A stretch of DNA of 64,000 nt from Asterias rubens. Its lineage: Eukaryota. Position 1 is the stretch's first letter. The number at the start of each line of letters is the position of its first letter. A model generated the notes under the pieces. The model searched no databases. It saw nothing but the letters and a program-made list of their open reading frames with translations, and had not been told where the DNA came from. The position numbers were made by a program, and so were the translations under genes. Positions 1,784 to 38,516 of this stretch are shown one piece after another. Location of the stretch: assembly GCF_902459465.1 (NCBI RefSeq), contig NC_047064.1:6572001-6636000 (forward strand). Reading direction: 5' to 3'.

Positions 1784-2779
1784 CTAGAGCGTTTGTGCTG
1801 TTGCCGTTTGCTGAATCGGGTCTATGGCCAAAGAGGGCGCACCAGTAGACTCTCCAGGACGCACCCGCTTTCGGCGAAATCGCTTCTGTACGAGTTGCTT
1901 CAGCTGAGTGCGGAAATGCTCGTATTTGAAGCAATAAACGACTGGATTCACGCACATGTTGCACATGATCATACTCATAAACGCCTGACCAATGAGAATT
2001 ACTAATGCGCCGGAGCTTGAAGAAAATGCACCGATGGCAATGAACACCCGAAACGCCTGCATCGGAGTCCAGCAAATGAAGAACATGCAACCAGCAATCA
2101 ACAACGTCATGATGACGTTTCTCTTAGCCTTGCTCAAGATACCATTTTGCTGATTGGCGTTAACATTGTCAAGTTTGTGTCGAAGAACGAGGAGTATTCT
2201 CACGTATGAAAACGAGATGAGTGTCACAGGAATAGCGTACTCCACCAACATAATCACAATGAACAGAACGATCCTAGCAGTGGGACTTGTGGAATAATCA
2301 TAGCCGCACTTGTTACCAGTGAATTTGAACAAAAAGGTAGACCTCAGCGCATACGTGAAACCGATGATCCAAGCAACACACATTGAAACTTTGATCTTTA
2401 AGAGTGAGCAGTAGTTGCGGTGTTTGACCGGATAGCACGTGGCAAGAAAACGCTCCAGCGATATCACCACCAGATTGTACGTGGATGCTACGCTTACACC
2501 CCAAACGAAAAAACCTGAGCCAACCAACCTACAGAGAATCAAACCGAAGAAATTAATTTCCAAATTGTCCAAAAGCGAAGTTTGTCTGATAAAAGTCACT
2601 GCGAGGAACACCAAACCAGAGATGAAGTCGATGATGGACTGGTGACGGATAAGTCGGTTAGTGAAGGAGCTGAACTGTTTACGCCTGACCGTCATGACGA
2701 AAATCGCCAAACCGTTTCCGAGGATAGCCAAAAATGCCACGATCATATTAAACACAAAAGCCAAACCTTCACTTGCCAT
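1784..2779 (-). CDS. Class A (rhodopsin-like) 7TM GPCR, single coding exon, type A (331 aa)
   Basis: Seven hydrophobic segments with class A motifs: TM1 LGNGL, TM2 QSIIDF, LCRL Cys plus ECL2 NKCG Cys, SLERF (DRY variant), TM6 FFICWTP, TM7 NMCVNPVVY, helix 8 FRTQLKQL. Confidence 0.93.
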   Translation of the reverse strand: MASEGLAFVFNMIVAFLAILGNGLAIFVMTVRRKQFSSFTNRLIRHQSIIDFISGLVFLAVTFIRQTSLLDNLEINFFGLILCRLVGSGFFVWGVSVASTYNLVVISLERFLATCYPVKHRNYCSLLKIKVSMCVAWIIGFTYALRSTFLFKFTGNKCGYDYSTSPTARIVLFIVIMLVEYAIPVTLISFSYVRILLVLRHKLDNVNANQQNGILSKAKRNVIMTLLIAGCMFFICWTPMQAFRVFIAIGAFSSSSGALVILIGQAFMSMIMCNMCVNPVVYCFKYEHFRTQLKQLVQKRFRRKRVRPGESTGAPSLAIDPIQQTATAQTL

Positions 2780-3188
2780 TGTAGGCTGATCGGGAAAAAA
2801 AGTTTATCAAAAATACTCTGAAGTATTTTGATCAGATTGTTTGCTGCTCCAACAACAGATGAATATAAGTTGAGATTGTTGAGTGTACTAAGTAAAGGCT
2901 TGATTGTTTTGAGAAAGATATCATCAACTAAAATGGCGCGACTTAGTTTGGTGAAAGCAGGAAATATCAATGGTAAATTCAGAAACCCACAGCATGTGGT
3001 TTATACTGATAACTTCGGATCTCTCACCAACTATCCTTGTCCAGGCGAACAGTAGTGGGGCCAAAGCATAAAACGAATGTGCGGAGTAGTCGAAGGTATT
3101 TGAATAAAACTGTACAGGGCAACCTTAGACGATTATATTTATAGGAATCCACATCACACACCGTATACAACACTGAACATGTTATTCA

Positions 3189-3497
3189 AAATTGAAGTTT
3201 GGCGGCTAAATTGCACCAAAGATCCTTTTAGAGTCATGTAATGCTTTCCGCAAGCTTTCAGCATTTCTTGTTAACCTGTAAAGTGCCACCGACTTTCAAG
3301 CAAACAAAAAATCGGGACCTGATTCTCGTTGATCACAAACAATCAACTTCAAAATAAAAGTTTGAAGGTTAATTTGCAGCCAAGATCCTTTCAGAGTCAT
3401 GTGTGGCTTTCTGCCAGCTTTCAGCATTTCTTAAGACGCCACCGACTTTGAAGCAAACCAAATATCGGGACCTGAATCTTGTTGATCACAAACAATC
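3189..3497. repeat. ~160-bp direct duplication upstream of type A/B genes
   Basis: Two diverged copies of aaaattgaagttt...gttgatcacaaacaatc; the type C upstream region (~9165-9330) has only one. Confidence 0.8.
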
Positions 3498-3501
3498 TAC
3501 T

Positions 3502-3598
3502 CATCATCATTCGGCATAGACTTGCGTCTGTGCCCGCTCGTCATCAGGTTGTAATGGGGGCGCACTCCTGGAGTTGCCGCAATCACCTGGTGTCTGTC
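3502..3598 (-). mobile_element. 97-bp 5'-truncated LINE-like 3' end with 11-bp TSD
   Basis: AACAATCTACT at 3491-3501 and 3599-3609; minus strand ends in (ATG)3. Copies at 14575, 19855, 25142, 27858 and 36418. Confidence 0.7.
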
Positions 3599-3804
3599 AA
3601 CAATCTACTGTTGCAGTGAAATACTCTAGATTTGAAAGATCAACGCATTTAATTTCTTGACACACATTCTCGTCAAGAAACCTACAGTTAGACTATTCTT
3701 CTAGGTCATTCTTTTAAATTCTCAAGAAAAAAGAAAGAAAAAAAGATAGTAACCGGATACAACTTTTCGTCAAGACCTCCAGAAACTTTAATCCAAATCT
3801 TCAG

Positions 3805-3970
3805 GTCGGCTCAGAGAAGAAATGACTTCAAATGAGACCTGGAAAGACAGACTCGGCTTCGAGTGCAGAAACTTAATAGACCAACAAAATACAAAGTCGG
3901 CTCAGAGCAGAAATGACGACGTATGAGACCTAGAAAGACCCGGTTGGTTAAGAGGACAAAGAACTTGGAT
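3805..3970. repeat. Degenerate ~45-bp tandem repeat of the intergenic spacers
   Basis: Units of gtcggctcagagaagaaatgactt...agacc.ggaaagac recur 3-4 times here and in every spacer type. Confidence 0.7.
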
Positions 3971-4500
3971 ATTTTCTGGGTTAAAAAAGGGTTCTGTCTT
4001 TTCTGGGTCGGCAATCAAAGTGAAAGACGCTAAAAAATGAAAGATCAACGCTTTTAATTTCTTGACACACAATTCTCACCAAGAAACTTTCAGATTAAGA
4101 ATACTCGTCAAGGTCGTTCTTATAAATGATCAAGGCAATAAAAGAAAACGGTAACCGTGCACATCGGAATAAAACTAGTCGTCAAGACCTTCAAATTGTG
4201 TTTACCCCAAACAGTCTACTGCAGTGAAAGAATTAAAAATGAATTTCTCAACACATAATATTCTCGTAACGAAACTTGCAAGTTATTCAATGTCTTCAAG
4301 GTTATAAAACAAAAGCAAAAAAAAAACGGAAAAAAAGAGTCGGCTTCGAGCACGGACACTTAATATAAACAAAACTTAGGATTACGTATACATTCTGTGC
4401 ATATAGGAATGTTATTTTTTTGGCAAAACCATCAAATACCGTTTTTGTTTTCCCGTGACTATCTGCACATTTGAGTGAACCGTACCTTATTTCTAAAATC

Positions 4501-4792
4501 TTACATCGCTTGTGTCGTTGCCAATTGCTGAATCGGGTCTATGGCCAAAGAGGGCGCACCAGTAGACTCCTCTCCAGGACGCACTCGGTTTAGACCAAAT
4601 CGGCTCCGTACAAGTTGCTTGAGCTGTGTACGGAAATGCTCGTACTTGAAGCAATAAACGACTGGATTTACACTCATGTTGCACATGATCATACCCATGA
4701 GTGCCTGTCCAAGGAGATTAACTGATGAGGAGAGTGGCCGAGCATGCGATAGTCACGTTCAACGCAGTTGCACAGCCGTCATTTGATTCCAT
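4501..4792 (-). pseudogene. Internally deleted GPCR pseudogene (psi copy 1)
   Basis: ATG at 4792 reads MESNDGCATALNVTIACSA, like the N-terminus of the 37518-38516 gene. It is joined out of frame to TM7 and the tail (VNLLGQALMGMIMCNMSVNPVVY...QAM*). 292 bp versus ~999 bp for an intact gene. Confidence 0.9.
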
Positions 4793-5583
4793 CGTAAAAT
4801 TGATTACAAATGAAAATGTAGCGAAATAAATTGTGAAGTTTTTTAGTATGAGTTTTTGCAGCGGATTTTATATTAAAAAAAGGTTAAATTGGGGTATGTT
4901 GAATGAACTCTCAGTGTAACAAATTTGAGGTAAAATTTTCTTATAAATCAATGTGAAATCCGCGGGAAAAAAAAACGTTTTATTTACTACTTTCGATCTC
5001 AAAAACACCGCTTTGTACACCGAGTGCACCAGTAATGCAACCGAAAGCTAAAATAAACCAGCCTGAGATTTAGAAAGTATTTAAATAAAACTGTTAAACC
5101 TCAGGCAAGGTTGAACGATTGTCTAAGGCTCCAAATAATAAAATGAACGCGCAGTGTTGAATATAGTCATTGCTTTATGAAAAGATTTGTCTCGAGAACT
5201 TAGCAATGAACAATACATTTGAGTTATATATAAATGCACCAAGGTCCTACAAAAGAATGTAATTCCTGTTTAACTTATCAAGAGTCACAGGCACTCGAGG
5301 TTTAAACACCTACATCGAATTGACAAATTGGTTATCACAAATACTCGCGGGGTTTATCTTTTATATAATTTGAGGGCCAATGCTTTTTACTCTCCCTAAT
5401 ATAATGTTTCCTGTTCTTAGAGGAAAGCTCCAAAAACCCTTTGGGAGTATGTGTACATCTCGTTAAGTTCCTTCGGGAATAATATGTTACATATTCCTAA
5501 CGTTTTTGTCAAAAGCCACTTTACCGTCAAACCAAACCTTTACATAAATTTCATAAAACTGGTAGTGAAACTCGAGTTCTTAA

Positions 5584-5845
5584 AGTAACTGGACACTTTT
5601 GGTAATTACTCAAAATAGTTGTTAGCATACAAACTTACTTGTTTAACGATCAAAGGAGAGCTGTTGATAGTATATAAAACATTTTTTAGAAACGGCTCCC
5701 TCTGAAGTAACGTAGTCTCGAGAAAGAAGTAATTTTCCACTCAAATAATGTTATGTGAATTTGACTTCGAGACCTCAGAATTAGATTTTAGAATTAGGCA
5801 TTAGTAGACAGCACACAACTTCGTTAGACAAGGTTGTTTTTTCTT
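5584..5845. mobile_element. Truncated family-1 MITE in the psi spacer
   Basis: One terminus after TTAA, other end missing; copies near 11386 (intact aggcagtggacac end), 16665, 21953 and 29956. Confidence 0.75.
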
Positions 5846-6015
5846 CCAGTTTTATCATTCTTTTGAATCCTCAAGGTAACAAAAAAATCGGTATTAAACT
5901 AATTGTCAAAACCTACAACAATTTGTGTTTTATACAAATCTTCAAGTCGGCTCAGAGAAGAAAGGACTTAGTAAGACCCGGATAGACAGAGTCGGCCTAT
6001 AGCACAGAGACTTAA

Positions 6016-6336
6016 AGCCATTGGACACAGTCGGAACAGAACCAAAAAAAAGTTCACAGATTTACAAATAACTTACAGGGTTTACAAAAGGTAATGGTGA
6101 AAGACTTCTGTTGAAATGGAATGCTTTACTTTGTGAGAAAACATTAAAACAATATCGATTCTCGATATTACGGATGACACGGCGAAACGTGCGGAAACAA
6201 GGGTGGGTTTTCCCCGTTATTTTCTCCCGACTCCGATGAACAATTGAGCCTAAATTATCACAGGTTTGTTATTTTATATATAAAATGTGATACACGAAGT
6301 GTGGGCCTTGGACAATCGTGTAAATGTCCAATGGCT
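6016..6336. mobile_element. TTAA-flanked MITE, family 3
   Basis: TIR agccattggaca / tgtccaatggct with TTAA TSD; copies at 11818-12138, 17097-17416, 22385-22705 and 30388-30708. Empty paralogous site (acttaatagacc) near 3870. Confidence 0.88.
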
Positions 6337-6691
6337 TTAATAAACAAAAAAAAATACAAAGTCGGCTCGTCAGAGCAGAAATTACCTTTAAGACATAGAA
6401 CGAACCGGTTGGCTAGAAGCACAATGGATATTTTTGTGGTCTAAGTTCTGTCTTTATGGGCAATCAATGTGGAAGATGCTAACATTGAAAGATCAACGCT
6501 TTTAGTTTCTTGATACACATTCTCGTCAAGATACTTTCAGATTAAGAATATTCTTCTTGGTAGTTCTTGTAAATCTTCAAGGTAACAATACAAAAAGGTA
6601 ACCGTGCACATCGATGTAAAACTTTTCGTCAAGATCTTCAAAACGTTTGTATTTTAACAACATCTTCAGGCTCAGAGAAGAAAAGACTTTA

Positions 6692-7062
6692 AGGAACATA
6701 ACAGAGTTTATAAGAAAACAAATCTTGAATACTATAAATTTGCATGAAACTTACACGGTCTAATGATGATGATGGTAGGAAACATATTTTGAAATATTTA
6801 GGTCTGAAATGTCATTTTTGATGAGAAATAAATACAACTTGTCAGAGTTTACCGCTCAGTGAGCGTTTTATTCATTTTTATTTCAAACGATATCATGCAA
6901 ATGTGTAGTGTGGTTTTTTGTTTCACCATGTTCTGGTGACCCAGGTGGTCGATCGACCTCAAACCTCTCCAGGTTTTTTCAGTGTTTTGGTATTATGGTG
7001 GATTACATAAAGTGCTTACACTGCCAGCAACTGTTAGCTAAAACCAATTTTGCAATGTTCCT
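6692..7062. mobile_element. TTAA-flanked MITE, family 4 (diverged)
   Basis: Termini aggaacat / atgttcct; twin at 31064-31434, relatives at 40412 and 56735. Confidence 0.8.
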
Positions 7063-7406
7063 TTAATAAGACCCGGAAAGGCAGAGTCGGCTTCGAGCAA
7101 AGAGACTTATTAGACCTAGAAAGACCCATTCAGCTCAGAGCAGAATGATTTTTACCTGGAAAGAACCGGTCAGTTCAGAGCACAACAGAACATGGATATT
7201 TTCTGGCCGCTCGAAATGAAAGATTAATTCTTTTAGTTTCCTGACTCACCTACCCGTCGAGCTAGCAAATTTCCTCGATCGTCAAAAAAAAAGTACGTTC
7301 TGTGGATTTCGGAATATTACCTTTTTGGCAAAACCATCAAATACCGTTTGCGTTTTCTCGTGAATTATTTGCATATTTGTGTGAATCGTACCCTATTTCT
7401 TAGTTC

Positions 7407-7630
7407 TTACATCGCCTGTGTGATTGCCGATTGCTGTATCGGGTCTATGGCCAAAGAGGGCGCATCTTTAGACTCAACTCCAGGACGCACTCGGTTTCGA
7501 CCAAATCGGCCCCGTACAAGTTGCTTAAGCTGTGTACGGAAATGCTCGTACTTGAAGCAATAAACGACTGGATTCACGCTCATGTTGCACATGATCATAC
7601 CAATGAGTGCCTGTCCCAGGAGATTAACTA
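7407..7630 (-). pseudogene. 5'-truncated GPCR fragment (TM7 plus C-tail, F1)
   Basis: LVNLLGQALIGMIMCNMSVNPVVY...SAITQAM*. Homology stops at ~7630, where the 3' flank of the next gene (acgcccagt...) begins. Confidence 0.88.
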
Positions 7631-7759
7631 ACGCCCAGTATACCGCACAAACCCGTGCACATCGGAATAACAATTTTCGTTAAAACAATCAAAAGCATTT
7701 TATGCCCTTTTTCGGGAATTTTGTGCGTGTTTGAATGAATCGTACCTTATTTCTGAGAA

Positions 7760-8757
7760 CTAGAGCGCTTGTGCTGTTGCTGTTTGCTGAATCGGGTCTA
7801 TGGCCAAAGAGGGCGCACCAGTAGACTCCACTCCAGGATGCACTCGGTTATGGCGAAATCGCTTCTTTACGAGTTGCTTGAGCTGTGTGCGGAAATGCTC
7901 GTACTTGAAGCAATAAACGACTGGATTCACGCACATGTTGCACATGATCAAACCCATAAATACCTGACCCAGGAGAGTTACTAACGAACTTGAGCTTGAA
8001 GAAACTGCACCAATGGTAATGAACACCCGCAACGTCTGCATTGGAGTCCAACAAATGAAGAACATGAAACCAGCAATCAACAACGTAATTATGACGTTTC
8101 TTTTGGCCTTGCTCAAGATACGGTTTTGCTGATTGGCGTTAGCATTGTCAAGTTTGTGTCGAAGAACGAGGAGTATTCTACCGTACGGAAACGATATCAA
8201 GATCACTGGAATAATGTACTCCACCAACATGATCAAAATGAATAGAACGATCCTAGCAGTGGGACTTATGGAATAATCAAAGCCGCACTTGTTGTCAGTG
8301 ATTTTGTACAAAATGATAAACCTTATCGCATAGGCGAAACCGATGACCCAAGCAGCACACATTGAAACTTTGATCTTGAAGAGTGAGCAGTAGTTGCGTA
8401 GTTGACCGGATAGCACGTGGCAAGAAAACGCTCCAGCGATATCACCACCAGATTGTACGTGGATGCTACGCTTAAACCCCAAACAAAAAAACTTGAGCGA
8501 ACCAACCTACAGAGAATCCACCCGGAGAAATTCCCCTCTAGATTGTCCAAAAGCGAAGTTTGTCTAATAACAGTCACAGCGAGGAACACCAAACCAGAGA
8601 CGAAGTCGATGATGGATTGGTGACGGATAAGTCGGTTTGTGAAGGAGCTGAACTGTTTACGTCTGACCGTCATGACGAAAATCACCAAACCGTTTCCACA
8701 GATGGCAAAGCATGCCATGATCATGTTGAACGCAAAAGCCAAACCTTCACTTGCCAT
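7760..8757 (-). pseudogene. GPCR type C with net 1-bp frameshift after TM3
   Basis: 998 bp versus 999 bp for its near-identical intact twin at 32136-33134. Lesion at ~8397-8404 (gcgtagttgacc versus gcggtgtttgacc). Two overlapping ORFs in the track cover the two halves. Confidence 0.85.
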
Positions 8758-10307
8758 TGTAAGCTGAGTGGAAAGAAAAAGTTTATCAAAAGATACTCTG
8801 AAGAATTCTGATCAGACGGTTTGCTGCTCCAAGAACAGATGGATATAAGTTGAGTTTTGGTTGAATTCACTCGGTAAAATCTTGATTGTTTTGAGAGAGA
8901 TATCATCAACTAAAATGGCGCGACTGAGTTTTGTGAAAGCAGGAAATATCGATGAGAAATTCAGAAACACCCCCAAGTGGTTTATACTAATAACTTCAGA
9001 TCTATCACGCAGTATCCAGCCGAACGGTAGTGGGACCAAAGCATAAAACGAATCTGCCGGAGGAGTCGAAGATATCTGAATACAACTGTACAGGGCAAGC
9101 TTGTGCGATTGTTTTTTATAGGAATCTACATGACGAACACTACTGACGCTGGACATTGTTTTCAAAATTTAAGTTTGAAGGCTAATTTTCACCAAAGATC
9201 CTTTCAGAGTTCTGTAATACAATTTGCCAGCTTGTTAAGGTCCTTGCGGCATTTCTTGTTAACCTGTAAAACGCCACCGACTTTCAAGCAAACAAAAAAT
9301 CGGGACCTGAGTCTTGTTTATCACAAACATTTTAATGGCGGTGAAAGACTCTGACATTGAAAGATCAACTCTTTACATTTCTTGACACACATTCTCGTCA
9401 AGAAACTTACGGTAAGAATATGTATCTAGGTCATCCTTTTAAATCCTCAAGAAAAAAAGAAAGAAAAAAAGATAGTAACCGGTATACAACTTTTCGTCAA
9501 GACCTCCAGAAACTTTAATCAAAATTTTCAGGTCGGCTCAGAGAAGAAATGACTTCAAATGAGACCTGGAAAGACAGGCTCGGCTTCGAGCACAGAGACT
9601 TAATTAAGACCAAAAAAACACTGAGTCTGCTCAGAGCAGAAATGACTTATAAGACACAGAAAGACCCGGTTGGCTAAGAGAACAAAAGAGCTTGGATATT
9701 TTCTGGGTCTAAGTTCTGTCTTCTCTAAGCCGGCAATCAAAGTGAAAGACGCTAAAATTGAAAGATCAATGCTTTTAATTTCTTGACACACAATTCTCAC
9801 CAAGAAACTTTCAGATTAAGAATACTTGTCAAGGTCGTTCTTATAAATGATCAAGGCAACAAAGGAAAACAGTAACAGTGCACGTCGGTATAAAACTAGT
9901 CGTCAAGACCTTCAAATTTAAACCGCGACCTGAATCGTGTTTACCACAAACAGTCTACTGCAGTGAAAGAATTAAAAATGAATTTCTCAACACATAATAT
10001 TCTCGTAACGAAACTTGCAAGTTATTCAATGTCGTCAAGGTTATAAAACAAAAGCAAAAAACTTTATATTTAGACTTTCAAATTTGTTTGTGTGCTATCC
10101 AAATCTCCAAGTCGGCTCAGAAAAGAAAAGACTTAATAAGACACGGAAAAAAAGAGTCGGCTTCGAGCACGGACACTTAATATAAAAAAAAACTTAGGAT
10201 TACGTATACATTCTGTGCATATAGGAATGTTATTTTTTTGGCAAAACCATCAAATAACGTTTTTGTTTTCTGCATATTTGAGTGAACCGTACCTTATTTC
10301 TAAAATC

Positions 10308-10599
10308 TTACATCGCTTGTGTCGTTGCCAATTGCTGAATCGGGTCTATGGCCAAAGAGGGCGCACCGGTAGACTCCACTCCAGGACGCACTCGGTTTAG
10401 ACCAAATCGGCTCCGTACAAGTTGCTTGAGCTGTGTACGGAAATGCTCGTACTTGAAGCAATAAACGACTGGATTTACACTCATGTTGCACATGATCATA
10501 CCCATGAGTGCCTGTCCAAGGAGATTAACTGATGAGGAGAGTGGCCGAGCATGCGATAGTCACGTTCAACGCAGTTGCAAAGCCGTCATTTGATTCCAT
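10308..10599 (-). pseudogene. Internally deleted GPCR pseudogene (psi copy 2)
   Basis: Same deletion junction as 4501-4792; keeps F at codon 7 (MESNDGFATA) like the intact MESN gene. Confidence 0.9.
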
Positions 10600-12856
10600 C
10601 GTAAAATTGATTACAAATGAAAATGTAGCGAAATAAATTGTGAAGTTTTTTAGTATGACTTTTTGCAGCGGATTTTATATTAAAAAAGGTTAAATTGGGG
10701 TATGTTGAATGAACTATCAGTGTAACAAATTTGAGGTAAAATTTTCTTATAAATCAATGTGAAATCCTCGGGAAAAACGGTTTATTGACTACTTTCGATC
10801 TCAAAAACACCGCTTTGTACACCGAGTGCACCAGTAATGCAACCGAAAGCTAAAATAAACCAGCCTGAGATTTAGAAAGTATTTAAATAAAACTGTAAAA
10901 CCTCAGGCAAGGTTGAACGATTGTCTAAGGCTCCAAATAATAAAATGAACGCGCAGTGTTGAATATAGTCATTGCTTTATGAAAAGATTTGTCTCGAGAA
11001 CTTAGCAATGAACAATACATTTGAGTTATATATAAATGCACCAAGGTCCTACAAAAGAATGTAATTCCTGTTTAACTTATCAAGAGTCACAGGCACTCGA
11101 GGTTTAAACACCTACATCGAATTGACAAATTGGTTATCACAAATACTCGCGGGGTTTATCTTTTATATAATTTGAGGGCCAATGCTTTTTACTCTCCCTA
11201 ATATAATGTTTCCTGTTCTTAGAGGAAAGCTCCAAAAACCCTTTGGGAGTATGTGTACATCTCGTTAAGTTCCTTCGGGAATAATATGTTACATATTCCT
11301 AACGTTTTTGTCAAAAGCCACTTTACCGTCAAACCAAACCTTTACATAAATTTCATAAAACTGGTAGTGAAACTCGAGTTCTTAAAGGCAGTGGACACTT
11401 TTGGTAATTACTCAAAATAGTTGTTAGCATACAAACTTACTTGTTTACCGATCAAAGGAGAGCTGTTGATAGTATATAAAACATTCGTTAGAAACGGCTC
11501 CCTCTGAAGTAACGTAGTCTCGAGAAAGAAGTAATTTTCCACTCAAATAATGTTATGTGAATTTGACTTCGAGACCTCAGAATTAGATTTTAGAATTAGG
11601 CATTAGTAGACAGCACACAACTTCGTTAGACAAGGTTGTTTTTTCTTCGAGTTTTATCATTCTTTTGAATCCTCAAGGTAACAAAAAAATCGGTATTAAA
11701 CTAATTGTCAAAACCTACAACAATTTGTGTTTTATACAAATCTTCAAGTCGGCTCAGAGAAGAAAGGACTTAGTAAGACCCGGATAGACAGAGTCGGCCT
11801 ATAGCACAGAGACTTAAAGCCATTGGACACTTTCGGAACAGAACCAAAACAAAGTTCACAGATTTACAAATAACTTACAGGGTTTACAAAAGGTAATGGT
11901 GAAAGACTTCTGTTGAAATGGAATGCTTTACTTTTTGAGAAAACATTAAAACAATATCAATTCTCGAAATTACGGATGACACGGCGAAACGTGCGGAAAC
12001 AAGGGTGGGTTTTCCCCGTTATTTTCTCCCGACTCCGATGACCGATTGAGCCTAAATTATCACAGGTTTGTTATTTTATATATAAAATGTGATACACGAA
12101 GTGTGGGCCTTGGACAATCGTGTAAATGTCCAATGGCTTTAATCAACCAAAAAAAATACCAAGTCGGCTCGTCAGAGCAGAAATTACCTTTAAGACATAG
12201 AACGAACCGGTTGGCTAGAAGCACAATGGATATTTTTGTGGTCTAAGTTCTGTCTTTATGGGCAATCAATGTGGAACATGCTAACATTGAAAGATCAACG
12301 CTTTTAGTTTCTTGACACGCAATTCTCACCAAGAAACTTTCAGATTAAGAATACTCGTCAAGGTCGTTCTTATAAATGATCAAGGCAACAAAGGAAAACA
12401 GTAACCGTGCACATCGGTATAAAACTAGTCGTCAAGACCTTCAAATTTAAACCGCGACCTGAATTGTGTTTACCACAAACAATCTACTGCAACGAAAGAC
12501 TTAACAATGAATTTCTTAACACATAATATTCTCGTAACGAAACTTGCAAATTATTCATAGTCCTCAAGGTAACAAAACAAAAACAGTAAACCGTGCACAT
12601 CGGAATAAAACTTTTCATTTAGACTTTCAAAATGTTTTGTGTGCTATCCAAATCTTCAAATCGGCTCAGAAAAGAAAAGACCCGTAAAAAAGGAAGTCGG
12701 CTTCGAGCATGGACACTTCATAATAAAAACAACTTAGGATTACGTACATTCTGTGCATATAGGAAGATTATTTTTTGGCAAAACCATCGAATATCGTTTG
12801 TGTTTTCTCGTGAATTATTTGCATATTTGAGTGATTCGTACCTTATTTCTTAGTTC

Positions 12857-13852
12857 TTACATCGCCTGTGTAATTGCCGATTGCTGTATCGGGTCTATGG
12901 CCAAAGAGGGCGCATCGTTAGACTCCACTCCAGGACGCACTCGGCTTCGACCAAATCGGCCCCGTACAAGTTGCTTAAACTGTGTACGGAAATGCTCGTA
13001 CTTGAAGCAATAAACGACAGGGTTCACGCTCATGTTGCACATGATCAAACCCGTGAAAGCCAGACTGATTGAAGTGAATGACCTTGTTCTTCTTGTGACG
13101 ACACCAATGGTTAGGAGAAATCGCAAAGTCTGCGTCGGGGTCCAGCAAATGAAGAACATGCAACCAGCGATCAGCATCGTCATGATGACGTTTCTCTTAG
13201 CCTTACTGAAGACACCATCTTGCTGATTGGCGTTAGCAATGTCAAGTTTGTGTCGAAGAACGAGGAGTATTGTAACGTACGAAAACGATATAAGGATGAC
13301 TGGAACGATATACTCGACGAAAACAGTTACACAAAACACAATATTCAATGCAGTGGGACTAATGGAACGATTAAAGCCGCACCGATTCCCATTGACTTTG
13401 TAGAGGAAAATATACATGACAGCATATATGAACCCGATGATCCAAGCAACACACATTGAAACGTTGATCTTAAAGAGTGAGCAGTAGTTGCGGTGTTTGA
13501 CCGGATAGCACGTGGCAAGAAAACGCTCCAGCGATATCACCACCAGATTGTACGTGGATGCTACGCTTACACCCCAAACAAAGAAGTTTGAGAAAATCAA
13601 CCTGCAGAGAATCCAACCAGAGAAATGTATCTCTACATTCTCCAGAAGCGAACTTTGAATGATCCCAGTCATGAGGAGAAACACCAAACCAGAGATGAAG
13701 TCGATGATGGATTGGTGACGGATAAGTCGGTTAGTGAAGGAGCTGAACTGTTTACGCCTGACCGTCATGACGAAAATCACCAAACCGTTTCCGAGGATAG
13801 CCAAAAATGCCATGATCATATTTAACACAAAAGCCAAACCTTCACTTGCCAT
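12857..13852 (-). CDS. Class A GPCR type B1 (331 aa)
   Basis: Intact 7TM ORF from ATG 13852 (MASEG), same motifs; YVTIL and RTQFK variant. The track extension to 13882 uses a TTG and is not used. Confidence 0.92.
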   Translation of the reverse strand: MASEGLAFVLNMIMAFLAILGNGLVIFVMTVRRKQFSSFTNRLIRHQSIIDFISGLVFLLMTGIIQSSLLENVEIHFSGWILCRLIFSNFFVWGVSVASTYNLVVISLERFLATCYPVKHRNYCSLFKINVSMCVAWIIGFIYAVMYIFLYKVNGNRCGFNRSISPTALNIVFCVTVFVEYIVPVILISFSYVTILLVLRHKLDIANANQQDGVFSKAKRNVIMTMLIAGCMFFICWTPTQTLRFLLTIGVVTRRTRSFTSISLAFTGLIMCNMSVNPVVYCFKYEHFRTQFKQLVRGRFGRSRVRPGVESNDAPSLAIDPIQQSAITQAM

Positions 13853-15589: not shown

Positions 15590-15881
15590 TTACATCGCTT
15601 GTGTCGTTGCCAATTGCTGAATCGGGTCTATGGCCAAAGAGGGCGCACCAGTAGACTCCACTCCAGGACGCACTCGGTTTAGACCAAATCGGCTCCGTAC
15701 AAGTTGCTTGAGCTGTGTACGGAAATGCTCGTACTTGAAGCAATAAACGACTGGATTTACACTCATGTTGCACATGATCATACCCATGAGTGCCTGTCCA
15801 AGGAGATTAACTGATGAGGAGAGTGGCCGAGCATGCGATAGTCACGTTCAACGCAGTTGCACAGCCGTCATTTGATTCCAT
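15590..15881 (-). pseudogene. Internally deleted GPCR pseudogene (psi copy 3)
   Basis: Same 292-bp structure and junction as copy 1. Confidence 0.9.
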
Positions 15882-20871: not shown

Positions 20872-21163
20872 TTACATCGCTTGTGTCGTTGCCAATTGCT
20901 GAATCGGGTCTATGGCCAAAGAGGGCGCACCAGTAGACTCCACTCCAGGACGCACTCGGTTTAGACCAAATCGGCTCCGTACAAGTTGCTTGAGCTGTGT
21001 ACGGAAATGCTCGTACTTGAAGCAATAAACGACTGGATTTACACTCATGTTGCACATGATCATACCCATGAGTGCCTGTCCAAGGAGATTAACTGATGAG
21101 GAGAGTGGCCGAGCATGCGATAGTCACGTTCAACGCAGTTGCACAGCCGTCATTTGATTCCAT
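20872..21163 (-). pseudogene. Internally deleted GPCR pseudogene (psi copy 4)
   Basis: Same 292-bp structure and junction. Confidence 0.9.
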
Positions 21164-28874: not shown

Positions 28875-29166
28875 TTACATCGCTTGTGTCGTTGCCAATT
28901 GCTGAATCGGGTCTATGGCCAAAGAGGGCGCACCAGTAGACTCCACTCCAGGACGCACTCGGTTTAGACCAAATCGGCTCCGTACAAGTTGCTTGAGCTG
29001 TGTACGGAAATGCTCGTACTTGAAGCAATAAACGACTGGATTTACACTCATGTTGCACATGATCATACCCATGAGTGCCTGTCCAAGGAGATTAACTGAT
29101 GAGGAGAGTGGCCGAGCATGCGATAGTCACGTTCAACGCAGTTGCACAGCCGTCATTTGATTCCAT
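28875..29166 (-). pseudogene. Internally deleted GPCR pseudogene (psi copy 5)
   Basis: Same 292-bp structure and junction. Confidence 0.9.
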
Positions 29167-31778: not shown

Positions 31779-32006
31779 TTACATCGCCTGTGTGATTGCC
31801 GATTGCTGTATCGGGTCTATGGCCAAAGAGGGCGCATCTTTAGACTCCACTCCAGGACGCACTCGGTTTCGACCAAATCGGCCCCGTACAAGTTGCTTAA
31901 TTAAGCTGTGTACGGAAATGCTCATACTTGAAGCAATAAACGACTGGATTCACGCTCATGTTGTACATGATCATACCAATGAGTGCCTGTCCCAGGAGAT
32001 TAACTA
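31779..32006 (-). pseudogene. 5'-truncated GPCR fragment (TM7 plus C-tail, F2) with extra TTAA
   Basis: Twin of 7407-7630, with a 4-bp duplication (ttaattaa at 31897-31904) that shifts the frame. Confidence 0.88.
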
Positions 32007-32135
32007 ACGCCCAGTATACCGCACAAACCCGTGCACATCGGAATAACAATTTTCGTTAAAACAATCAAAAGCATTTTATGCCCTTTTTCGGGAATTTTGT
32101 GCGTGTTTGAATGAATCGTACCTTATTTCTGAGAA

Positions 32136-33134
32136 CTAGAGCGCTTGTGCTGTTGCTGTTTGCTGAATCGGGTCTATGGCCAAAGAGGGCGCACCAGTAG
32201 ACTCCACTCCAGGATGCACTCGGTTATGGCGAAATCGCTTCTTTACGAGTTGCTTGAGCTGTGTGCGGAAATGCTCGTACTTGAAGCAATAAACGACTGG
32301 ATTCACGCACATGTTGCACATGATCAAACCCATAAATGCCTGACCCAGGAGAGTTACTAACGAACTTGAGCTTGAAGAAACTGCACCAATGGTAATGAAC
32401 ACCCGCAACGTCTGCATCGGAGTCCAACAAATGAAGAACATGAAACCAGCAATCAACAACGTAATTATGACGTTTCTTTTGGCCTTGCTCAAGATACCGT
32501 TTTGCTGATTGGCGTTAGCATTGTCAAGTTTGTGTCGAAGAACGAGAAGTATTCTACCGTACGGAAATGATATCAAGATCACTGGAATAATGTACTCCAC
32601 CAACATGATCAAAATGAATAGAACGATCCTAGCAGTGGGACTTATGGAATAATCAAAGCCGCACTTGTTGTCAGTGATTTTGTACAAAATGATAAACCTT
32701 ATCGCATAGGCGAAACCGATGACCCAAGCAGCACACATTGAAACTTTGATCTTGAATAGTGAGCAGTAGTTGCGGTGTTTGACCGGATAGCACGTGGCAA
32801 GAAAACGCTCCAGCGATATCACCACCAGATTGTACATGGATGCTACGCTTAAACCCCAAACAAAAAAACTTGAGCGAACCAACCTACAGAGAATCCACCC
32901 GGAGAAATTCCCCTCTAGATTGTCCAAAAGCGAAGTTTGTCTAATAACAGTCACAGCGAGGAACACCAAACCAGAGACGAAGTCGATGATGGATTGGTGA
33001 CGGATAAGTCGGTTTGTGAAGGAGCTGAACTGTTTACGTCTGACCGTCATGACGAAAATCACCAAACCGTTTCCACAGATGGCAAAGCATGCCATGATCA
33101 TGTTAAACGCAAAAGCCAAACCTTCACTTGCCAT
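32136..33134 (-). CDS. Class A GPCR type C (332 aa)
   Basis: Intact 7TM ORF with GN, QSIIDF, SLERF, CWTP and NPVVY motifs. Confidence 0.93.
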   Translation of the reverse strand: MASEGLAFAFNMIMACFAICGNGLVIFVMTVRRKQFSSFTNRLIRHQSIIDFVSGLVFLAVTVIRQTSLLDNLEGNFSGWILCRLVRSSFFVWGLSVASMYNLVVISLERFLATCYPVKHRNYCSLFKIKVSMCAAWVIGFAYAIRFIILYKITDNKCGFDYSISPTARIVLFILIMLVEYIIPVILISFPYGRILLVLRHKLDNANANQQNGILSKAKRNVIITLLIAGFMFFICWTPMQTLRVFITIGAVSSSSSSLVTLLGQAFMGLIMCNMCVNPVVYCFKYEHFRTQLKQLVKKRFRHNRVHPGVESTGAPSLAIDPIQQTATAQAL

Positions 33135-34698: not shown

Positions 34699-35694
34699 TT
34701 ACATCGCCTGTGTAATTGCCGATTGCTGTATCGGGTCTATGGCCAAAGAGGGCGCATCGTTAGACTCCACTCCAGGACGCACTCGGCTTCGACCAAATCG
34801 GCCCCGTACAAGTTGCTTAAGCTGTGTACGGAAATGCTCGTACTTGAAGCAATAAACGACAGGGTTCACGCTCATGTTGCACATGATCAAACCCGTGAAA
34901 GCCAGACTGATTGAAGTGAATGACCTTGTTCTTCTTGTGACGACACCAATGGTTAGGAGAAATCGCAAAGTCTGCGTCGGGGTCCAGCAAATGAAGAACA
35001 TGCAACCAGCGATCAGCATCGTCATGATGACGTTTCTCTTAGCCTTACTGAAGACACCATCTTGCTGATTGGCGTTAGCAATGTCAAGTTTGTGTCGAAG
35101 AACGAGGAGTATTCTAACGTACGAAAACGATATAAGGATGACTGGAACGATATACTCGACGAAAACAGTTACACAAAACACAATATTCAATGCAGTGGGA
35201 CTAATGGAACGATTAAAGCCGCACCGATTCCCATTGACTTTGTAGAGGAAAATATACATGACAGCATATATGAACCCGATGATCCAAGCAACACACATTG
35301 AAACGTTGATCTTAAAGAGTGAGCAGTAGTTGCGGTGTTTGACCGGATAGCACGTGGCAAGAAAACGCTCCAGCGATATCACCACCAGATTGTACGTGGA
35401 TGCTACGCTTACACCCCAAACAAAGAAGTTTGAGAAAATCAACCTGCAGAGAATCCAACCAGAGAAATGTATCTCTACATTCTCCAGAAGCGAACTTTGA
35501 ATGATCCCAGTCATGAGGAGAAACACCAAACCAGAGATGAAGTCGATGATGGATTGGTGACGGATAAGTCGGTTAGTGAAGGAGCTGAACTGTTTACGCC
35601 TGACCGTCATGACGAAAATCACCAAACCGTTTCCGAGGATAGCCAAAAATGCCATGATCATATTTAACACAAAAGCCAAACCTTCACTTGCCAT
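34699..35694 (-). CDS. Class A GPCR type B2 (331 aa)
   Basis: Protein identical to 23423-24418. Confidence 0.92.
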   Translation of the reverse strand: MASEGLAFVLNMIMAFLAILGNGLVIFVMTVRRKQFSSFTNRLIRHQSIIDFISGLVFLLMTGIIQSSLLENVEIHFSGWILCRLIFSNFFVWGVSVASTYNLVVISLERFLATCYPVKHRNYCSLFKINVSMCVAWIIGFIYAVMYIFLYKVNGNRCGFNRSISPTALNIVFCVTVFVEYIVPVILISFSYVRILLVLRHKLDIANANQQDGVFSKAKRNVIMTMLIAGCMFFICWTPTQTLRFLLTIGVVTRRTRSFTSISLAFTGLIMCNMSVNPVVYCFKYEHFRTQLKQLVRGRFGRSRVRPGVESNDAPSLAIDPIQQSAITQAM

Positions 35695-37517
35695 TGTAGG
35701 CTGATCGGGAAAAAAAGTTTATCAAAAAATACTCTGAAGTATTTTGATCAGATTGTTTGCTGCTCCAACAACAGATGAATATATGTTGAGATTGTTGAGT
35801 GTACTAAGTAAAGGCTTGATTGTTTTGAGAAAGATATCATCAACTAAAATGACGCGACTTAGTTTGGTGAAAGCAGGAAATATCAATGGCAAATTCAGAA
35901 ACCCACAGCATGTGGTTTATACTGATAACTTCGGATCTCTCACCAACTATCCTTGTCCAGGCGAACAGTAGTGGGGCCAAAGCATAAAACGAATGTGCGG
36001 AGTAGTCGAAGGTATTTGAATAAAACTGTACAGGGCAACCTTAGACGATTATATTTATAGGAATCCACATCACACACCGTATACAACACTGAACATTTTA
36101 TTCAAAATTGAAGTTTGGCGGCTAAATTGCACCAAAGATCCTTTTAGAGTCATGTAATGCTTTCCGCAAGCTTTCAGCATTTCTTGTTAACCTGTAAAGT
36201 GCCACCGACTTTCAAGCAAACAAAAAATCGGGACCTGATTCTCGTTGATCACAAACAATCAACTTCAAAATAAAAGTTTGAAGGTTAATTTGCAGCCAAG
36301 ATCCTTTCAGAGTCATGTGTGGCTTTCTGCCAGCTTTCAGCATTTCTTAAGACGCCACCGACTTTGAAGCAAACCAAATATCGGGACCTGAATCTTGTTG
36401 ATCACAAACAATCTACTCATCATCATTCGGCATAGACTTGCGTCTGTGCCCGCTCGTCATCAGGTTGTAATGGGGGCGCACTCCTGGAGTTGCCGCAATC
36501 ACCTGGTGTCTGTCAACAATCTACTGCTGCAGTGAAATACTCTAGATTTGAAAGATCAACGCATTTAATTTCTTGACACACATTCTCGTCAAGAAACCTA
36601 CAGTTAGACTATTCTTCTAGGTCATTCTTTTAAATTCTCAAGAAAAAAGAAAGAAAAAAAGATAGTAACCGGTATACAACTTTTCGTCAAGACCTCCAGA
36701 AACTTTAATCCAAATTTTCAGGTCGGCTCAGAGAAGAAATGACTTCAAATGAGACCTGGAAAGACAGACTCGGCTTCGAGCACAGAGACTTAATTAAGAC
36801 CAAAAAAACACTGAGTCTGCTCAGAGCAGAAATGACTTATAAGACACAGAAAGACCCGGTTGGCTAAGAGAACAAAAGAGCTTGGATATTTTCTGGGTCT
36901 AAGTTCTGTCTTCTCTAAGCCGGCAATCAAAGTGAAAGACGCTAAAATTGAAAGATCAATGCTTTTAATTTCTTGACACACAATTCTCACCAAGAAACTT
37001 TCAGATTAAGAATACTCGTCAAGGTCGTTCTTATAAATGATCAAGGCAACAAAAGAAAACAGTAACCGTGCACATCGGTATAAAACTAGTCGTCAAGACC
37101 TTCAAATTTAAACCGCGACCTGAATTGTGTTTACCACAAACAATCTACTGCAACGAAAGACTTAAAAATGAATTTTCTTAACACATAATATTCTCGTAAC
37201 GAAACTTGCAAATTATTCATAGTCCTCAAGGTAACAAAACAAAAACAGTAAACCGTGCACATCGGAATACAACTTTTCATTTAGACTTTCAAAATGTTTT
37301 GTGTGCTATCCAAATCTTCAAATCGGCTCAGAAAAGAAAAGACCGGAAAAAGGGAGTCGGCTTCGAGCATGGACACTTAATAATAAAACAAAACTTAGGA
37401 TTACGTACATTCTGTGCATATAGGAAGATTATTTTTTGGCAAAACCATCGAATATCGTTTGTGTTTTCTCGTGAATTATTTGCATATTTGAGTGATTCGT
37501 ACCTTATTTCTTAGTTC

Positions 37518-38516
37518 TTACATCGCCTGTGTAATTGCCGATTGCTGTATCGGGTCTATGGCCAAAGAGGGCGCATCGTTAGACTCCACTCCAGGACGCA
37601 CTCGGCTTCGACCAAATCGGCCCCGTACAAGTTGCTTAAGCTGTGTACGGAAATGCTCGTACTTGAAGCAATAAACGACAGGGTTCACGCTCATGTTGCA
37701 CATGATCAAACCCGTGAAAGCCAGACTGATTGAAGTGAATGAACTTGTTCTTCTTGTGACGACACCAATGGTTAGGAGAAATCGCAAAGTCTGCGTCGGG
37801 GTCCAGCAAATGAAGAACATGCAACCAGCGATCAGCATCGTCATGATGACGTTTCTCTTAGCCTTACTGAAGACACCATCTTGCTGATTGGCGTTAGCAT
37901 TGAAAAGTTTGTTTCGTAGAACGAGGAGTATTCTAACGTACGAAAACGATATAAGGATGACTGGAACGATATACTCGACGAAAACAGTTACACAAAACAC
38001 AATATTCAATGCAGTGGGACTAATGGAACGATTAAAGCCGCACCGATTCCCATTGACTTTGTAGAGGAAAATATACATGACAGCATATATGAACCCGATG
38101 ATCCAAGCAACACACATTGAAACGTTGATCTTGAAGAGTGAGCAGTAGTTGCGGTGTTTGACCGGATAGCACGTGGCAAGAAAACGCTCCAGCGATATCA
38201 CCACCAGATTGTACGTGGATGCTACGCTTAAACCCCAAACAAAGAAGTTTGAGAAAATCAACCTGCAGAGAATCCAACCGGAGAAATTTATCTCTACATT
38301 CTCCAGAAGCGAACTTTGAATGATCCCAGTCATGAGGAGAAACACCAAACCAGAGAGGAAGTCGATGATGGATTGGTGACGGATAAGTCGGTTAGTGAAG
38401 GAGCTGAACTGTTCACGTCTGACCGTCATGACGAAAATCACCAAACCGTTTCCGAGAATGGCCGAGCATGCAATGGTCACGTTCAACGCAGTTGCAAAGC
38501 CATTATTTGATTCCAT
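37518..38516 (-). CDS. Class A GPCR type D (MESN N-terminus, B-like body; 332 aa)
   Basis: Intact ORF. The N-terminus and upstream flank match the psi copies; TM4-TM7, the tail and the 3' flank largely match type B. Confidence 0.93.
   Translation of the reverse strand: MESNNGFATALNVTIACSAILGNGLVIFVMTVRREQFSSFTNRLIRHQSIIDFLSGLVFLLMTGIIQSSLLENVEINFSGWILCRLIFSNFFVWGLSVASTYNLVVISLERFLATCYPVKHRNYCSLFKINVSMCVAWIIGFIYAVMYIFLYKVNGNRCGFNRSISPTALNIVFCVTVFVEYIVPVILISFSYVRILLVLRNKLFNANANQQDGVFSKAKRNVIMTMLIAGCMFFICWTPTQTLRFLLTIGVVTRRTSSFTSISLAFTGLIMCNMSVNPVVYCFKYEHFRTQLKQLVRGRFGRSRVRPGVESNDAPSLAIDPIQQSAITQAM

What the first reader, a model, noticed from the sequence alone, without database searches (positions are those of the whole stretch)
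1784..38516. 16-locus chemoreceptor-like GPCR array built from nested higher-order repeats
Seen order: A, psi, F, C(frameshift), psi, B1, psi, B1, psi, B2, B2, psi, F, C, B2, D, all on the minus strand. Start-to-start periods: ~5.28 kb (10308/15590/20872; 12857/18136/23423), 2716 bp (23423/26139), 2819 bp (34699/37518) and ~24.37 kb (4501/28875, 7407/31779, 7760/32136). Established: echinoderms have large clustered single-exon rhodopsin-type GPCR expansions (sea urchin surreal-GPCRs, sea star olfactory-receptor-like genes). Inference: an accordion locus under ongoing unequal crossover, with five near-identical B copies raising receptor dosage; likely copy-number polymorphic.
Basis: partly seen in the sequence, partly recalled or inferred. 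Interest (0 to 1): 0.7.

Follow-up and report, generated by a model that had tools for sequence, protein, structure and literature searches.

The report
Young chimeric GPCR gene array, starfish
A 37-kb stretch of common starfish (Asterias rubens) chromosome 3 holds a real tandem array of intronless orphan receptor genes that grew about five-fold since the split from its Pacific sister species, mainly by amplifying a hybrid gene made by unequal crossover. It is a clear but fairly ordinary example of how such receptor families evolve.

Summary
There are 16 loci on the minus strand in the stated order, with periods of about 5.28 kb, 2,716 bp, 2,819 bp and about 24.37 kb. Eight ORFs are intact (A, B1 x2, B2 x3, C2, D) and all are full-length Pfam 7tm_1 receptors. 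C1 carries a 1-bp deletion. The five "psi" loci are one internally deleted gene copied five times, and the two "F" loci are old C-terminal relics.

- **B is a hybrid gene.** It has A-type upstream DNA and the first ~55 codons, then a D-type body. Diagnostic sites split 20/20 then 133/136.
- **The sister species lacks it.** The orthologous A. amurensis interval is 7.5 kb, with one intact D ortholog and two A-type pseudogenes. The A. rubens interval is 36.7 kb.
- **B is young.** B-D dS is 0.019 against 0.09 for orthologs, and B units differ by 0-3 bases in 2.5 kb.
- **The assembly holds up.** Short-read contigs of the probable source animal contain the unique B2a-B2b junction, and their k-mer depths fit 5-6 copies.

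The family is an asteroid-specific orphan clade, not a conserved neuropeptide receptor. Chemosensory function, a dosage benefit and population copy-number variation remain untested. The scan has already judged similar young GPCR arrays elsewhere in this genome ordinary (s1-150231, s1-150253).

The parts
1784..2779 (-). Gene A: intact 331-aa 7tm_1 receptor, the terminal gene of the array. Its 1.7-kb upstream module is 99.6% identical to that of the B genes, but its body from codon ~58 onwards is only ~76% identical to B.
4501..4792 (-). psi1: internally deleted pseudogene. About 20 D-like N-terminal codons are joined out of frame to the last ~70 codons (24-aa ORF). Same structure at psi2-psi5.
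7407..7634 (-). F1: C-terminal relic (about aa 258-331, D-like tail) lying 144 bp downstream of C1. An equivalent relic sits behind the A/C-position gene in A. amurensis, so it predates the species split.
7760..8757 (-). C1: C-type gene with a 1-bp deletion near 8403 plus two adjacent substitutions relative to C2. Apparent pseudogene.
10308..10599 (-). psi2
12857..13852 (-). B1a: intact 331-aa chimeric B gene. The real ATG is at 13852; the TTG-extended ORF in the list is mechanical.
15590..15881 (-). psi3
18136..19131 (-). B1b: intact. Its gene body and upstream module show no base differences from B1a (0/993 and 0/1544).
20872..21163 (-). psi4
23423..24418 (-). B2a: intact chimeric B gene.
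24245..24262 (-). Crossover interval of the B chimera (CDS nt ~157-174, TM2), shown on B2a. On the 5' side B matches the A type; on the 3' side it matches the D type.
24419..25976 (-). A-type upstream module, shown here for B2a. There are six copies, upstream of A, B1a, B1b, B2a, B2b and B2c. Five differ by 0-7 bases in ~1.53 kb. It is array-specific in the genome apart from a ~100-bp dispersed element at 25139-25240.
25965..26018 (.). Unique B2a-to-B2b junction, the only gene-next-to-gene join with the 2,716-bp period. Its 31-mers occur once in the window. A short-read contig of run X1 spans it at depth 77.4.
26139..27134 (-). B2b: intact. Its gene body and upstream module show no base differences from B2a (0/993 and 0/1547).
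28875..29166 (-). psi5
31779..32010 (-). F2: copy of F1 with a 4-bp insertion.
32136..33134 (-). C2: intact 332-aa C-type gene. An independent metagenome contig (L033) carries a 98% identical C gene together with the start of F.
34699..35694 (-). B2c: intact, CDS identical to B2a and B2b. Its distal upstream region differs (2.4%).
37518..38516 (-). D: intact 332-aa gene at the 5' edge of the array. Conserved ortholog of A. amurensis amD (97.3% aa, dN/dS 0.14). Donor of the B body.
10143..26338 (.). Three copies of the 5.28-kb [psi + B] higher-order unit (98.7% over 10.9 kb).
1754..10507 (.). Left copy of the ~24.35-kb-offset duplication (A, psi1, F1, C1). Its partner is 26108-34898 (B2b, psi5, F2, C2). 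Identity is 98.8-99.6% outside the A/B gene body.

Best explanation
This is a genuine, recently expanded tandem array of intronless rhodopsin-class (7tm_1) orphan GPCR genes on Asterias rubens chromosome 3. The genes belong to an asteroid-specific family.

**How the array grew.** It grew by repeated non-allelic homologous recombination (unequal crossover, with some gene conversion).
1. A crossover inside the conserved TM1-TM2 coding region joined the promoter side and first ~55 codons of an A-type gene to the body and 3' flank of the conserved D gene. This created the hybrid gene B.
2. B was then amplified to five near-identical copies as 2.7-kb and 5.28-kb units. The 5.28-kb unit dragged along a dead, internally deleted gene (psi).
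3. A duplication with a ~24.35-kb offset copied the psi-F-C block.

**What is shown.** The repeat anatomy, the chimeric structure of B, the absence of B from the sister-species reference, the relative ages of the copies, and agreement of copy number with short-read k-mer depth.

**What is inferred.** The intact genes encode working receptors, since the canonical ERF, CWTP and NPVVY motifs and the TM3-ECL2 cysteines are present. They most likely sense external or other fast-changing ligands (about 50% for chemosensory). B probably puts a D-type ligand pocket under A-type regulation. The array is probably copy-number variable in populations.

The confidence given applies to the structural and evolutionary core, not to the function.
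For: **Receptor identity**
- Full-length 7tm_1 match (profile positions 1-260 of 260) with E 1e-26 to 1e-32. The motifs are read directly from the translations.

**Repeat anatomy**
- All loci and periods are reproduced.

**B is a chimera**
- A and B share an upstream module with 6-7 differences in 1,527 bp, and only 5 differences in CDS nt 1-175. From nt 176 to 996 they differ at 195 positions.
- B and D differ densely up to nt ~100, then at only 10 positions from nt 226 to 996. Their upstream regions are ~74% identical.
- At 157 sites fixed in both species (A = amA1, D = amD, A differs from D), B is A-type at 20/20 sites and then D-type at 133/136. Fisher p = 2e-22.

**Sister species**
- In A. 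amurensis (CP134956.1:20626301-20646876, L032) collinear flanks bracket only three genes: a D ortholog and two A-type genes that share one nonsense codon, plus one F relic.
- The neighbouring gene P0002 is the ortholog of the A. rubens gene 17 kb away.

**Timing**
- dS is 0.019 for B-D, against 0.083-0.091 for D-amD and 0.126 for L008-amL008.
- B units differ by 0-3 bases in 2.5 kb.

**Assembly check**
- An X1 contig spans the unique junction at depth 77.4. Shared-module contigs have depth 416-571, which is 81-109 per assembled copy.

**Independent samples**
- A marine metagenome run (X4) holds exact 258-391-nt pieces of the B body and the upstream module.
- An ENA metagenome contig carries C plus the start of F at 98% identity.

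**Family placement**
- 123+ GPCR matches genome-wide, with the nearest paralogs clustered on the same chromosome.
- The array genes sit in an Asterias chr3 clade (support 99), inside an asteroid-only family.
- PDB hits are weak and even across families: GALR2 3.6e-19, MCHR1, delta-opioid, TAAR1, beta-1 adrenergic.
- Between paralog types, 48-58% of extracellular-loop residues differ, against 25-27% in TM segments and 19-20% in intracellular parts.
Against: - No convincing transcript evidence was found. RNA runs hold at most 10% of the words, and the contigs laid are short and 95-99% alike, so they probably come from paralogs or relatives.
- The depth baseline rests on one junction contig, and the genome-wide single-copy depth of X1 is not known. 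A heterozygous junction would change the arithmetic.
- Perfect identity between some units could be partly a polishing artefact in a long-read assembly.
- Only one reference genome per species was compared. Fixed differences therefore cannot be separated from polymorphism, and without an outgroup the ancestral arrangement is unresolved (in particular whether C was lost in A. amurensis).
- B shows no sign of purifying selection since its origin. B-D has 9 nonsynonymous to 4 synonymous differences, and B1-B2 has 2 to 0. The numbers are too small to interpret.
- No ligand, tissue or G-protein coupling is known.
Confidence: 0.85

Rival explanations
1. Assembly artefact. The long-read assembler inflated a smaller array, or laid two haplotypes in tandem, so the real animal has fewer B and psi copies.
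For: Some units are identical over 2.5 kb. Tandem repeats of 98-100% identity are hard to size from noisy long reads. No spanning reads could be examined, because the runs are available only as contigs.
Against: The window has no gaps. The psi modules between identical B units carry 5-14 distinguishing differences. The one-off B2a-B2b junction is present in short-read contigs of the source sample. Depth per assembled copy (81-109) matches the depth of that unique junction (77.4), which would not hold if copies were doubled.
Confidence: 0.07
2. The array is old, and its near-identity comes from ongoing gene conversion rather than recent duplication. A. amurensis then simply lost copies.
For: Divergence is uneven between adjacent modules: B units show 0 differences while the psi modules next to them show 5-14. 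Mosaic tracts exist, for example a short A-like patch at B CDS nt 610-611. A. amurensis shows its own shuffling: amA1 and amA2 share a nonsense codon but have different 5' ends. The C type is older than the species split (C2-L008 dS 0.17) yet is absent from A. amurensis.
Against: Identity covers whole 2.7-5.3-kb units including non-coding spacers, with exact higher-order periodicity. All five psi copies share one deletion junction. The B hybrid combination is not in the A. amurensis reference at all, and B-D dS is one fifth of the orthologous dS.
Confidence: 0.15
3. The genes are receptors for endogenous peptides (galanin/kisspeptin/NPFF-like, as automatic annotation names them), not environmental chemoreceptors.
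For: The best PDB matches are peptide receptors such as GALR2, MCHR1 and opioid receptors. Sources name relatives 'galanin receptor 2b-like' and 'neuropeptide FF receptor 2-like'. A. rubens does have expanded peptide-receptor families, with 11 kisspeptin-type receptors (PMC13020265). D itself is conserved, with dN/dS 0.14.
Against: Similarity to any characterised receptor is low (about 72 bits) and about equal across galanin, MCH, opioid, TAAR and adrenergic receptors. No non-asteroid hit exceeds 33% identity. The genes show birth-and-death turnover with pseudogenes in both species. The N-terminus before TM1 is only about 5 residues long. The named kisspeptin-type receptors seen in the supplement are longer; for example ArKPR11 has 402 aa.
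Confidence: 0.25

Closest known systems
Acanthaster planci putative olfactory receptors (ApORs / starfish OR-like groups A-K; Roberts et al. 2017, PMC5442662)
   Same: Rhodopsin-type 7tm_1 genes in tandem arrays, expanded within a lineage, with conserved TM helices and variable extracellular loops. A. planci relatives of the array genes (41% identity) exist, one of them on a contig of 4,163,896 bp. That is the length the paper gives for scaffold 10, which carries a 12-gene cluster.
   Different: Membership in the named ApOR set could not be checked, because the sequences are not in the held supplements. ApORs were defined by expression in tube feet and the sensory tentacle, which is not shown here. 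In the tree the Asterias and Acanthaster/Patiria genes form separate, order-specific expansions.
Sea urchin surreal-GPCRs and sea cucumber OR-like genes (described in PMC7042368)
   Same: Large, independently expanded, mostly single-exon rhodopsin-type GPCR groups arranged in tandem in echinoderms.
   Different: No sea urchin or sea cucumber protein appeared among the hits. Assignment to a surreal group was not tested.
Hybrid genes made by unequal crossover in tandem receptor arrays, for example the human red/green opsin array (own knowledge)
   Same: The crossover lies within a conserved coding stretch of neighbouring paralogs. It yields a chimeric 7TM gene and a copy-number change in one step.
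   Different: Here the exchange also swaps the whole upstream region, the hybrid was then amplified five-fold, and no phenotype is known.
Other young GPCR arrays in the same genome, noted earlier by this scan (s1-150231, s1-150253)
   Same: Tandem intronless orphan GPCR genes in A. rubens that duplicated, recombined and decayed since the split from the Pacific sister species.
   Different: They lie on different DNA and were not re-examined here. The present array adds a cleanly resolved promoter-swap chimera and a higher-order repeat structure.

Membership tests
Rhodopsin-class GPCR (Pfam PF00001 7tm_1) | Full-length match to the 7tm_1 profile above the gathering score | tested here: met
   A, B2, C2 and D score 92-111 bits against a cut-off of 30.5, covering profile positions 1-260 of 260.
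Rhodopsin-class GPCR (Pfam PF00001 7tm_1) | Microswitch motifs: E/DRY at the end of TM3, CWxP in TM6, NPxxY in TM7, and a TM3-ECL2 cysteine pair | tested here: met
   ERF, CWTP, NPVVY and the two cysteines were read directly in all eight intact translations. TM boundaries were set by eye, not by a predictor.
Echinoderm OR-like / chemosensory GPCR expansions (surreal-GPCRs, ApORs) | Single-exon coding region, tandem clustering and lineage-specific expansion | tested here: met
   Uninterrupted ORFs, clusters on chromosome 3, and an asteroid-only and Asterias-only clade structure.
Echinoderm OR-like / chemosensory GPCR expansions (surreal-GPCRs, ApORs) | Phylogenetic grouping with a named surreal-GPCR or ApOR group | not tested
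   Reference sequences were not obtainable. Supplement searches found none.
Echinoderm OR-like / chemosensory GPCR expansions (surreal-GPCRs, ApORs) | Expression in sensory organs (tube feet, terminal tentacle) | tested here: inconclusive
   No RNA run holds more than 10% of the gene's words. The RNA contigs laid are short and carry mismatches.
Conserved bilaterian neuropeptide receptor (galanin/kisspeptin/NPFF type) | Clear orthology to characterised receptors, with conservation outside asteroids | tested here: not met
   The best PDB E-value is 3.6e-19, with near-equal scores for unrelated receptor families. Non-asteroid hits are at most 33% identical. The family is multi-copy and asteroid-specific in the tree.
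Segmental-duplication array shaped by non-allelic homologous recombination | Nested periodic units with chimeric junctions inside homologous sequence | tested here: met
   Periods. The B breakpoint lies in CDS nt 157-174. The B2a-B2b junction sequence was read.
Segmental-duplication array shaped by non-allelic homologous recombination | Copy-number difference between close relatives | tested here: met
   36.7 kb with 9 genes and 7 relics in A. rubens, against 7.5 kb with 3 genes and 1 relic in A. amurensis, between collinear flanks.
Segmental-duplication array shaped by non-allelic homologous recombination | Copy-number polymorphism within the species | not testable with these tools
   Only contigs of public runs were available, and the single read-laying run was used.

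The most novel reading that the evidence does not exclude
B is an adaptive promoter-swap. The conserved D-type ligand pocket was placed under A-type regulation and a new N-terminus/TM1. It was then driven to five identical copies in A. rubens within roughly the last fifth of the time since the split from A. amurensis. On this reading the amplification is a very young, selected change in the dosage or expression domain of a sensory receptor, rather than neutral churn, and should appear as a selective sweep or as structured copy-number variation.
Probability: 0.15. Interest if true: 0.6.

Novelty: new member of a known kind. Interest (0 to 1): 0.35.

Why it matters
The locus gives a base-level example of how a lineage-specific receptor family grows: one crossover makes a hybrid gene with a swapped promoter, and further crossovers amplify it. 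A sister-species genome fixes the starting state and the time scale. A. rubens is an experimental model with working receptor assays, and B and D differ almost only in promoter and N-terminus. That makes the pair a natural experiment on regulatory versus coding change in receptor evolution. Beyond this, it adds one more case to a pattern already described in echinoderms and already met elsewhere in this genome.

Tried and rejected
- **MAFFT --auto on unit pairs** timed out. It was replaced by pairwise dynamic programming.
- **ApOR sequences in the supplements of PMC5442662**: searches with motifs and N-termini of the A. planci relatives found nothing, because the supplements hold only ID tables and primers. 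Identity with ApOR2-4 is therefore not established. Only the scaffold length coincides.
- **Kisspeptin-receptor supplement (PMC9400282)**: the motif search was uninformative because the protein sequences there are printed letter by letter.
- **Exact-protein look-up of B2 in public assemblies**: nothing on record outside the source genome.
- **RNA evidence**: only small shares, and short, mismatched contigs.
- **ESM Atlas**: only generic rhodopsin-GPCR clusters; the nearest is echinoderm.
- **ORFs in the right flank (38.6-64 kb)**: no Pfam family.
- **Joints in run X3** (for example 27077 to 29006) have sides of only 24-27 letters. They were not interpreted as structural variants.
- **Full event-by-event history of the array**: abandoned, because the mosaic pattern and the lack of an outgroup leave several orders of events open.


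Full report
**Observation.** The window is G000:C3:6572001-6636000 of a 417.6-Mb assembly. Named homologs on a contig of the same length (22,888,987 bp) identify it as Asterias rubens.

There are eight intact ORFs of 331-332 aa: A, B1a, B1b, B2a, B2b, C2, B2c and D. C1 is split into two frames. Five loci are short 'psi' copies and two are 'F' fragments.

Self-blastn reproduces every period:
- 5,273 bp at 98.7% over 10.9 kb
- 24,354 bp at 95.9% over 8.8 kb
- 2,717 bp at 98.1%
- 2,813 bp at 97.7%

The window contains no N.

**What the genes are.** A, B2, C2 and D each match Pfam 7tm_1 over the whole profile, with E 1e-26 to 1e-32. The translations show ERF at the end of TM3, CWTP in TM6, NPVVY in TM7 and the TM3/ECL2 cysteines. 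The N-terminus before TM1 is about five residues.

Against solved structures the best scores are low and nearly equal for galanin-2, MCH-1, delta-opioid, TAAR1 and beta-1 adrenergic receptors, with E from 3.6e-19 to 2.5e-15. Source names such as 'galanin receptor 2b-like' are therefore best-hit labels, not orthology.

The genome holds at least 123 GPCR matches. The nearest paralogs (65-75% identity) are clustered on the same chromosome at 6.49-6.56 and 16.25-16.28 Mb.

In a 70-protein tree the array genes fall in an Asterias chromosome-3 clade (support 99). That clade sits inside a family containing only starfish sequences, and the Patiria and Acanthaster members form their own expansions.

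**Mosaic units.** Window-by-window identity between units is strikingly uneven. A and the B genes share a 1.7-kb upstream module with 6-7 differences in about 1,527 bp, and 0-1 among four of the B units. The A and B bodies, however, are only 74-91% identical. Conversely, B and D are 97-100% identical over most of the body, 88% over the first 200 nt, and about 74% upstream.

The upstream module occurs only in this array, in six copies, apart from a ~100-bp dispersed element.

**B is a hybrid gene.** A and B2b differ at 5 positions in CDS nt 1-175 and at 195 positions afterwards. B2b and D differ densely up to nt ~100, and at nt 157, then at only 10 positions from nt 226 to 996.

I then used only sites fixed in both species: those where A equals its A. 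amurensis counterpart, D equals its ortholog, and the two types differ (157 sites). B is A-type at the first 20 of 20 and D-type at 133 of the remaining 136. The best breakpoint lies between alignment nt 103 and 177 (Fisher p = 2e-22). Together this places the crossover in CDS nt ~157-174, inside the TM1-ICL1-TM2 stretch that is nearly invariant among all paralogs.

The D arrangement (D-type upstream, N-terminus and body) is shared with A. amurensis, so B is the derived recombinant. An unequal crossover between an A-type gene on one chromatid and a D-type gene on the other produces exactly such a hybrid and duplicates the genes in between. That matches the observed C-F-psi-B ... C-F-psi-A layout. 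This last step is inference.

**The dead loci.**
- **psi.** Each psi keeps a D-like ATG and about 20 codons, joined out of frame to the last ~70 codons, leaving a 24-aa ORF. All five copies have the same junction, so the deletion preceded the amplification. The psi upstream region is 86% identical to the upstream region of the second A-type gene of A. amurensis, and about 75% identical to D's.
- **F.** F is a C-terminal relic 144 bp behind each C gene. The same relic follows the corresponding gene in A. amurensis, so it is older than the species split.
- **C1.** C1 differs from C2 by a 1-bp deletion near 8403 with two adjacent substitutions. I cannot exclude that this is an assembly error.

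**Sister-species comparison.** Two look-ups gave 44 kb of A. amurensis chromosome CP134956.1. L032 is collinear with the window's right flank (88-92% identity), then with D, and at the other end with A's 3' flank and the left flank.

Between those flanks A. amurensis has only three genes:
- a D ortholog (97.3% aa to D, 92.7% to B)
- an A-type gene followed by the F relic
- a second A-type gene with a D-like N-terminus

Both A-type genes carry the same premature stop in TM5. The interval is 7.5 kb, against 36.7 kb in A. rubens. The next gene outward, P0002, is the 94.6% ortholog of the A. rubens gene 17 kb left of the window, and most other family members pair 1:1 at 91-98%. This array is therefore the exception in an otherwise stable family. 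Both species show shuffling of 5' ends and bodies.

**Timing.** Synonymous divergence is 0.083-0.091 for D versus its ortholog (dN/dS 0.14) and 0.126 for the neighbouring ortholog pair. For B versus D, outside the swapped N-terminus, it is 0.019.

Divergence between copies is as follows:
- psi groups differ by about 2%.
- psi1/psi5 and the A/B upstream modules differ by about 0.4%.
- psi2/3/4 differ by 0.2-0.7%.
- B1a/B1b and B2a/B2b differ at 0 of about 2,540 bases.

B thus arose after the species split, at roughly a fifth of that depth, and the latest duplications are essentially undiverged. B1 and B2 differ by two nonsynonymous and no synonymous changes, and B-D shows 9 to 4. The counts are too small to call selection.

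**Assembly check.** Only contigs of public runs were available. In run X1 (organism A, probably the source sample) one contig crosses the unique B2a-B2b junction. The 11 letters it carries between the two laid parts occur once in the window, at 25995. Its depth is 77.4.

Seven X1 contigs lying in shared modules have depths of 416-571. Dividing by the mean 31-mer multiplicity of the same stretch in the assembly (3.9-6.3) gives 81-109 per assembled copy, mean 89. An assembly with twice the true copy number would give about half the junction's depth.

Two caveats apply. The baseline is a single contig, and if that junction were heterozygous the arithmetic would change.

Independent samples hold parts of the array. 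A marine metagenome run (X4) has exact 258-391-nt pieces of the B/D body and the upstream module. An ENA metagenome contig carries an intact C gene plus the start of F, at 98.0-98.3% identity to both C units. No contig spans the B hybrid junction in other individuals, because the conserved stretch breaks short-read contigs there.

**Function.** No RNA run holds more than a tenth of the gene's words, and the RNA contigs that could be laid carry mismatches. Expression is therefore not shown.

Several features are what is described for echinoderm OR-like genes (PMC5442662; PMC7042368):
- Between paralog types, extracellular loops differ at 48-58% of residues, TM segments at 25-27% and intracellular parts at 19-20%.
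- The genes are intronless and tandemly arranged.
- There is pseudogene turnover in both species.
- The N-terminus is very short.

I rate a chemosensory or other environment-facing role at about 50%, an endogenous-ligand role at about 25%, and leave the rest open. If B is expressed, it should follow A's regulatory region while carrying D's ligand-facing body. This too is inference.

**Comparison and novelty.** Tandem, lineage-specific, single-exon rhodopsin-type GPCR expansions are established in sea urchins, crown-of-thorns starfish and sea cucumbers. This scan has already judged two other young GPCR arrays in the same genome ordinary (not re-tested here).

What is new here is the detail: a cleanly resolved promoter-swap hybrid, its five-fold amplification as a higher-order repeat, and a five-fold size difference from the sister species. 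I class it as a new member of a known kind.

**Limits.**
- No spanning reads, no population data and no outgroup were available.
- Only one reference genome per species was compared.
- Long-read polishing may have homogenised near-identical units.
- The complete order of events could not be reconstructed.

Noticed in passing
L032:10574-10576 and L032:14425-14427 (A. amurensis CP134956.1): Both A-type genes of the A. amurensis locus carry the same premature stop in TM5 (Tyr to stop), although their N-termini and upstream regions differ. This suggests gene conversion or duplication after the nonsense mutation. Only the D ortholog is intact there.
   Followed up: partly
window 818-1204, 39450-39838, 43464-43797, 44337-44684, 45270-45622, 47676-48078, 52901-53251, 63573-63869, and inside each psi unit (e.g. 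5580-5856): An interspersed repeat of about 390 bp (67-92% identity) occurs many times in the window and also in the A. amurensis locus. It is probably a SINE or MITE-like element. One copy sits in every psi unit.
   Followed up: no
window 25139-25240 (and the equivalent position in each A-type upstream module): A ~100-bp element inside the upstream module matches dozens of places on many chromosomes at 92-93% identity. It explains a local peak of short-read depth.
   Followed up: partly
window 54028-54440: A perfect two-copy tandem repeat of a 205-bp unit (100% matches, no indels).
   Followed up: no
G000:C3 6.486-6.556 Mb and 16.25-16.28 Mb: Further clusters of the same receptor family lie on the same chromosome, including pseudogenes with internal stops. 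Most intact members have 1:1 orthologs in A. amurensis, unlike the array in the window.
   Followed up: partly
A-type upstream module, unit positions 1400-1563 / 1563-1716 and 1830-1997 / 2235-2409 (e.g. window 24825-25141 and 25255-25834): Old internal duplications (75-80% identity) lie within the upstream module itself, so the spacer was also built by duplication.
   Followed up: no
L033 (ENA ERZ1764478 k141_4257629): A metagenome assembly contig holds a starfish C-type receptor gene that is 98% identical to C1 and C2. A. rubens-like DNA is therefore present in that environmental sample.
   Followed up: partly
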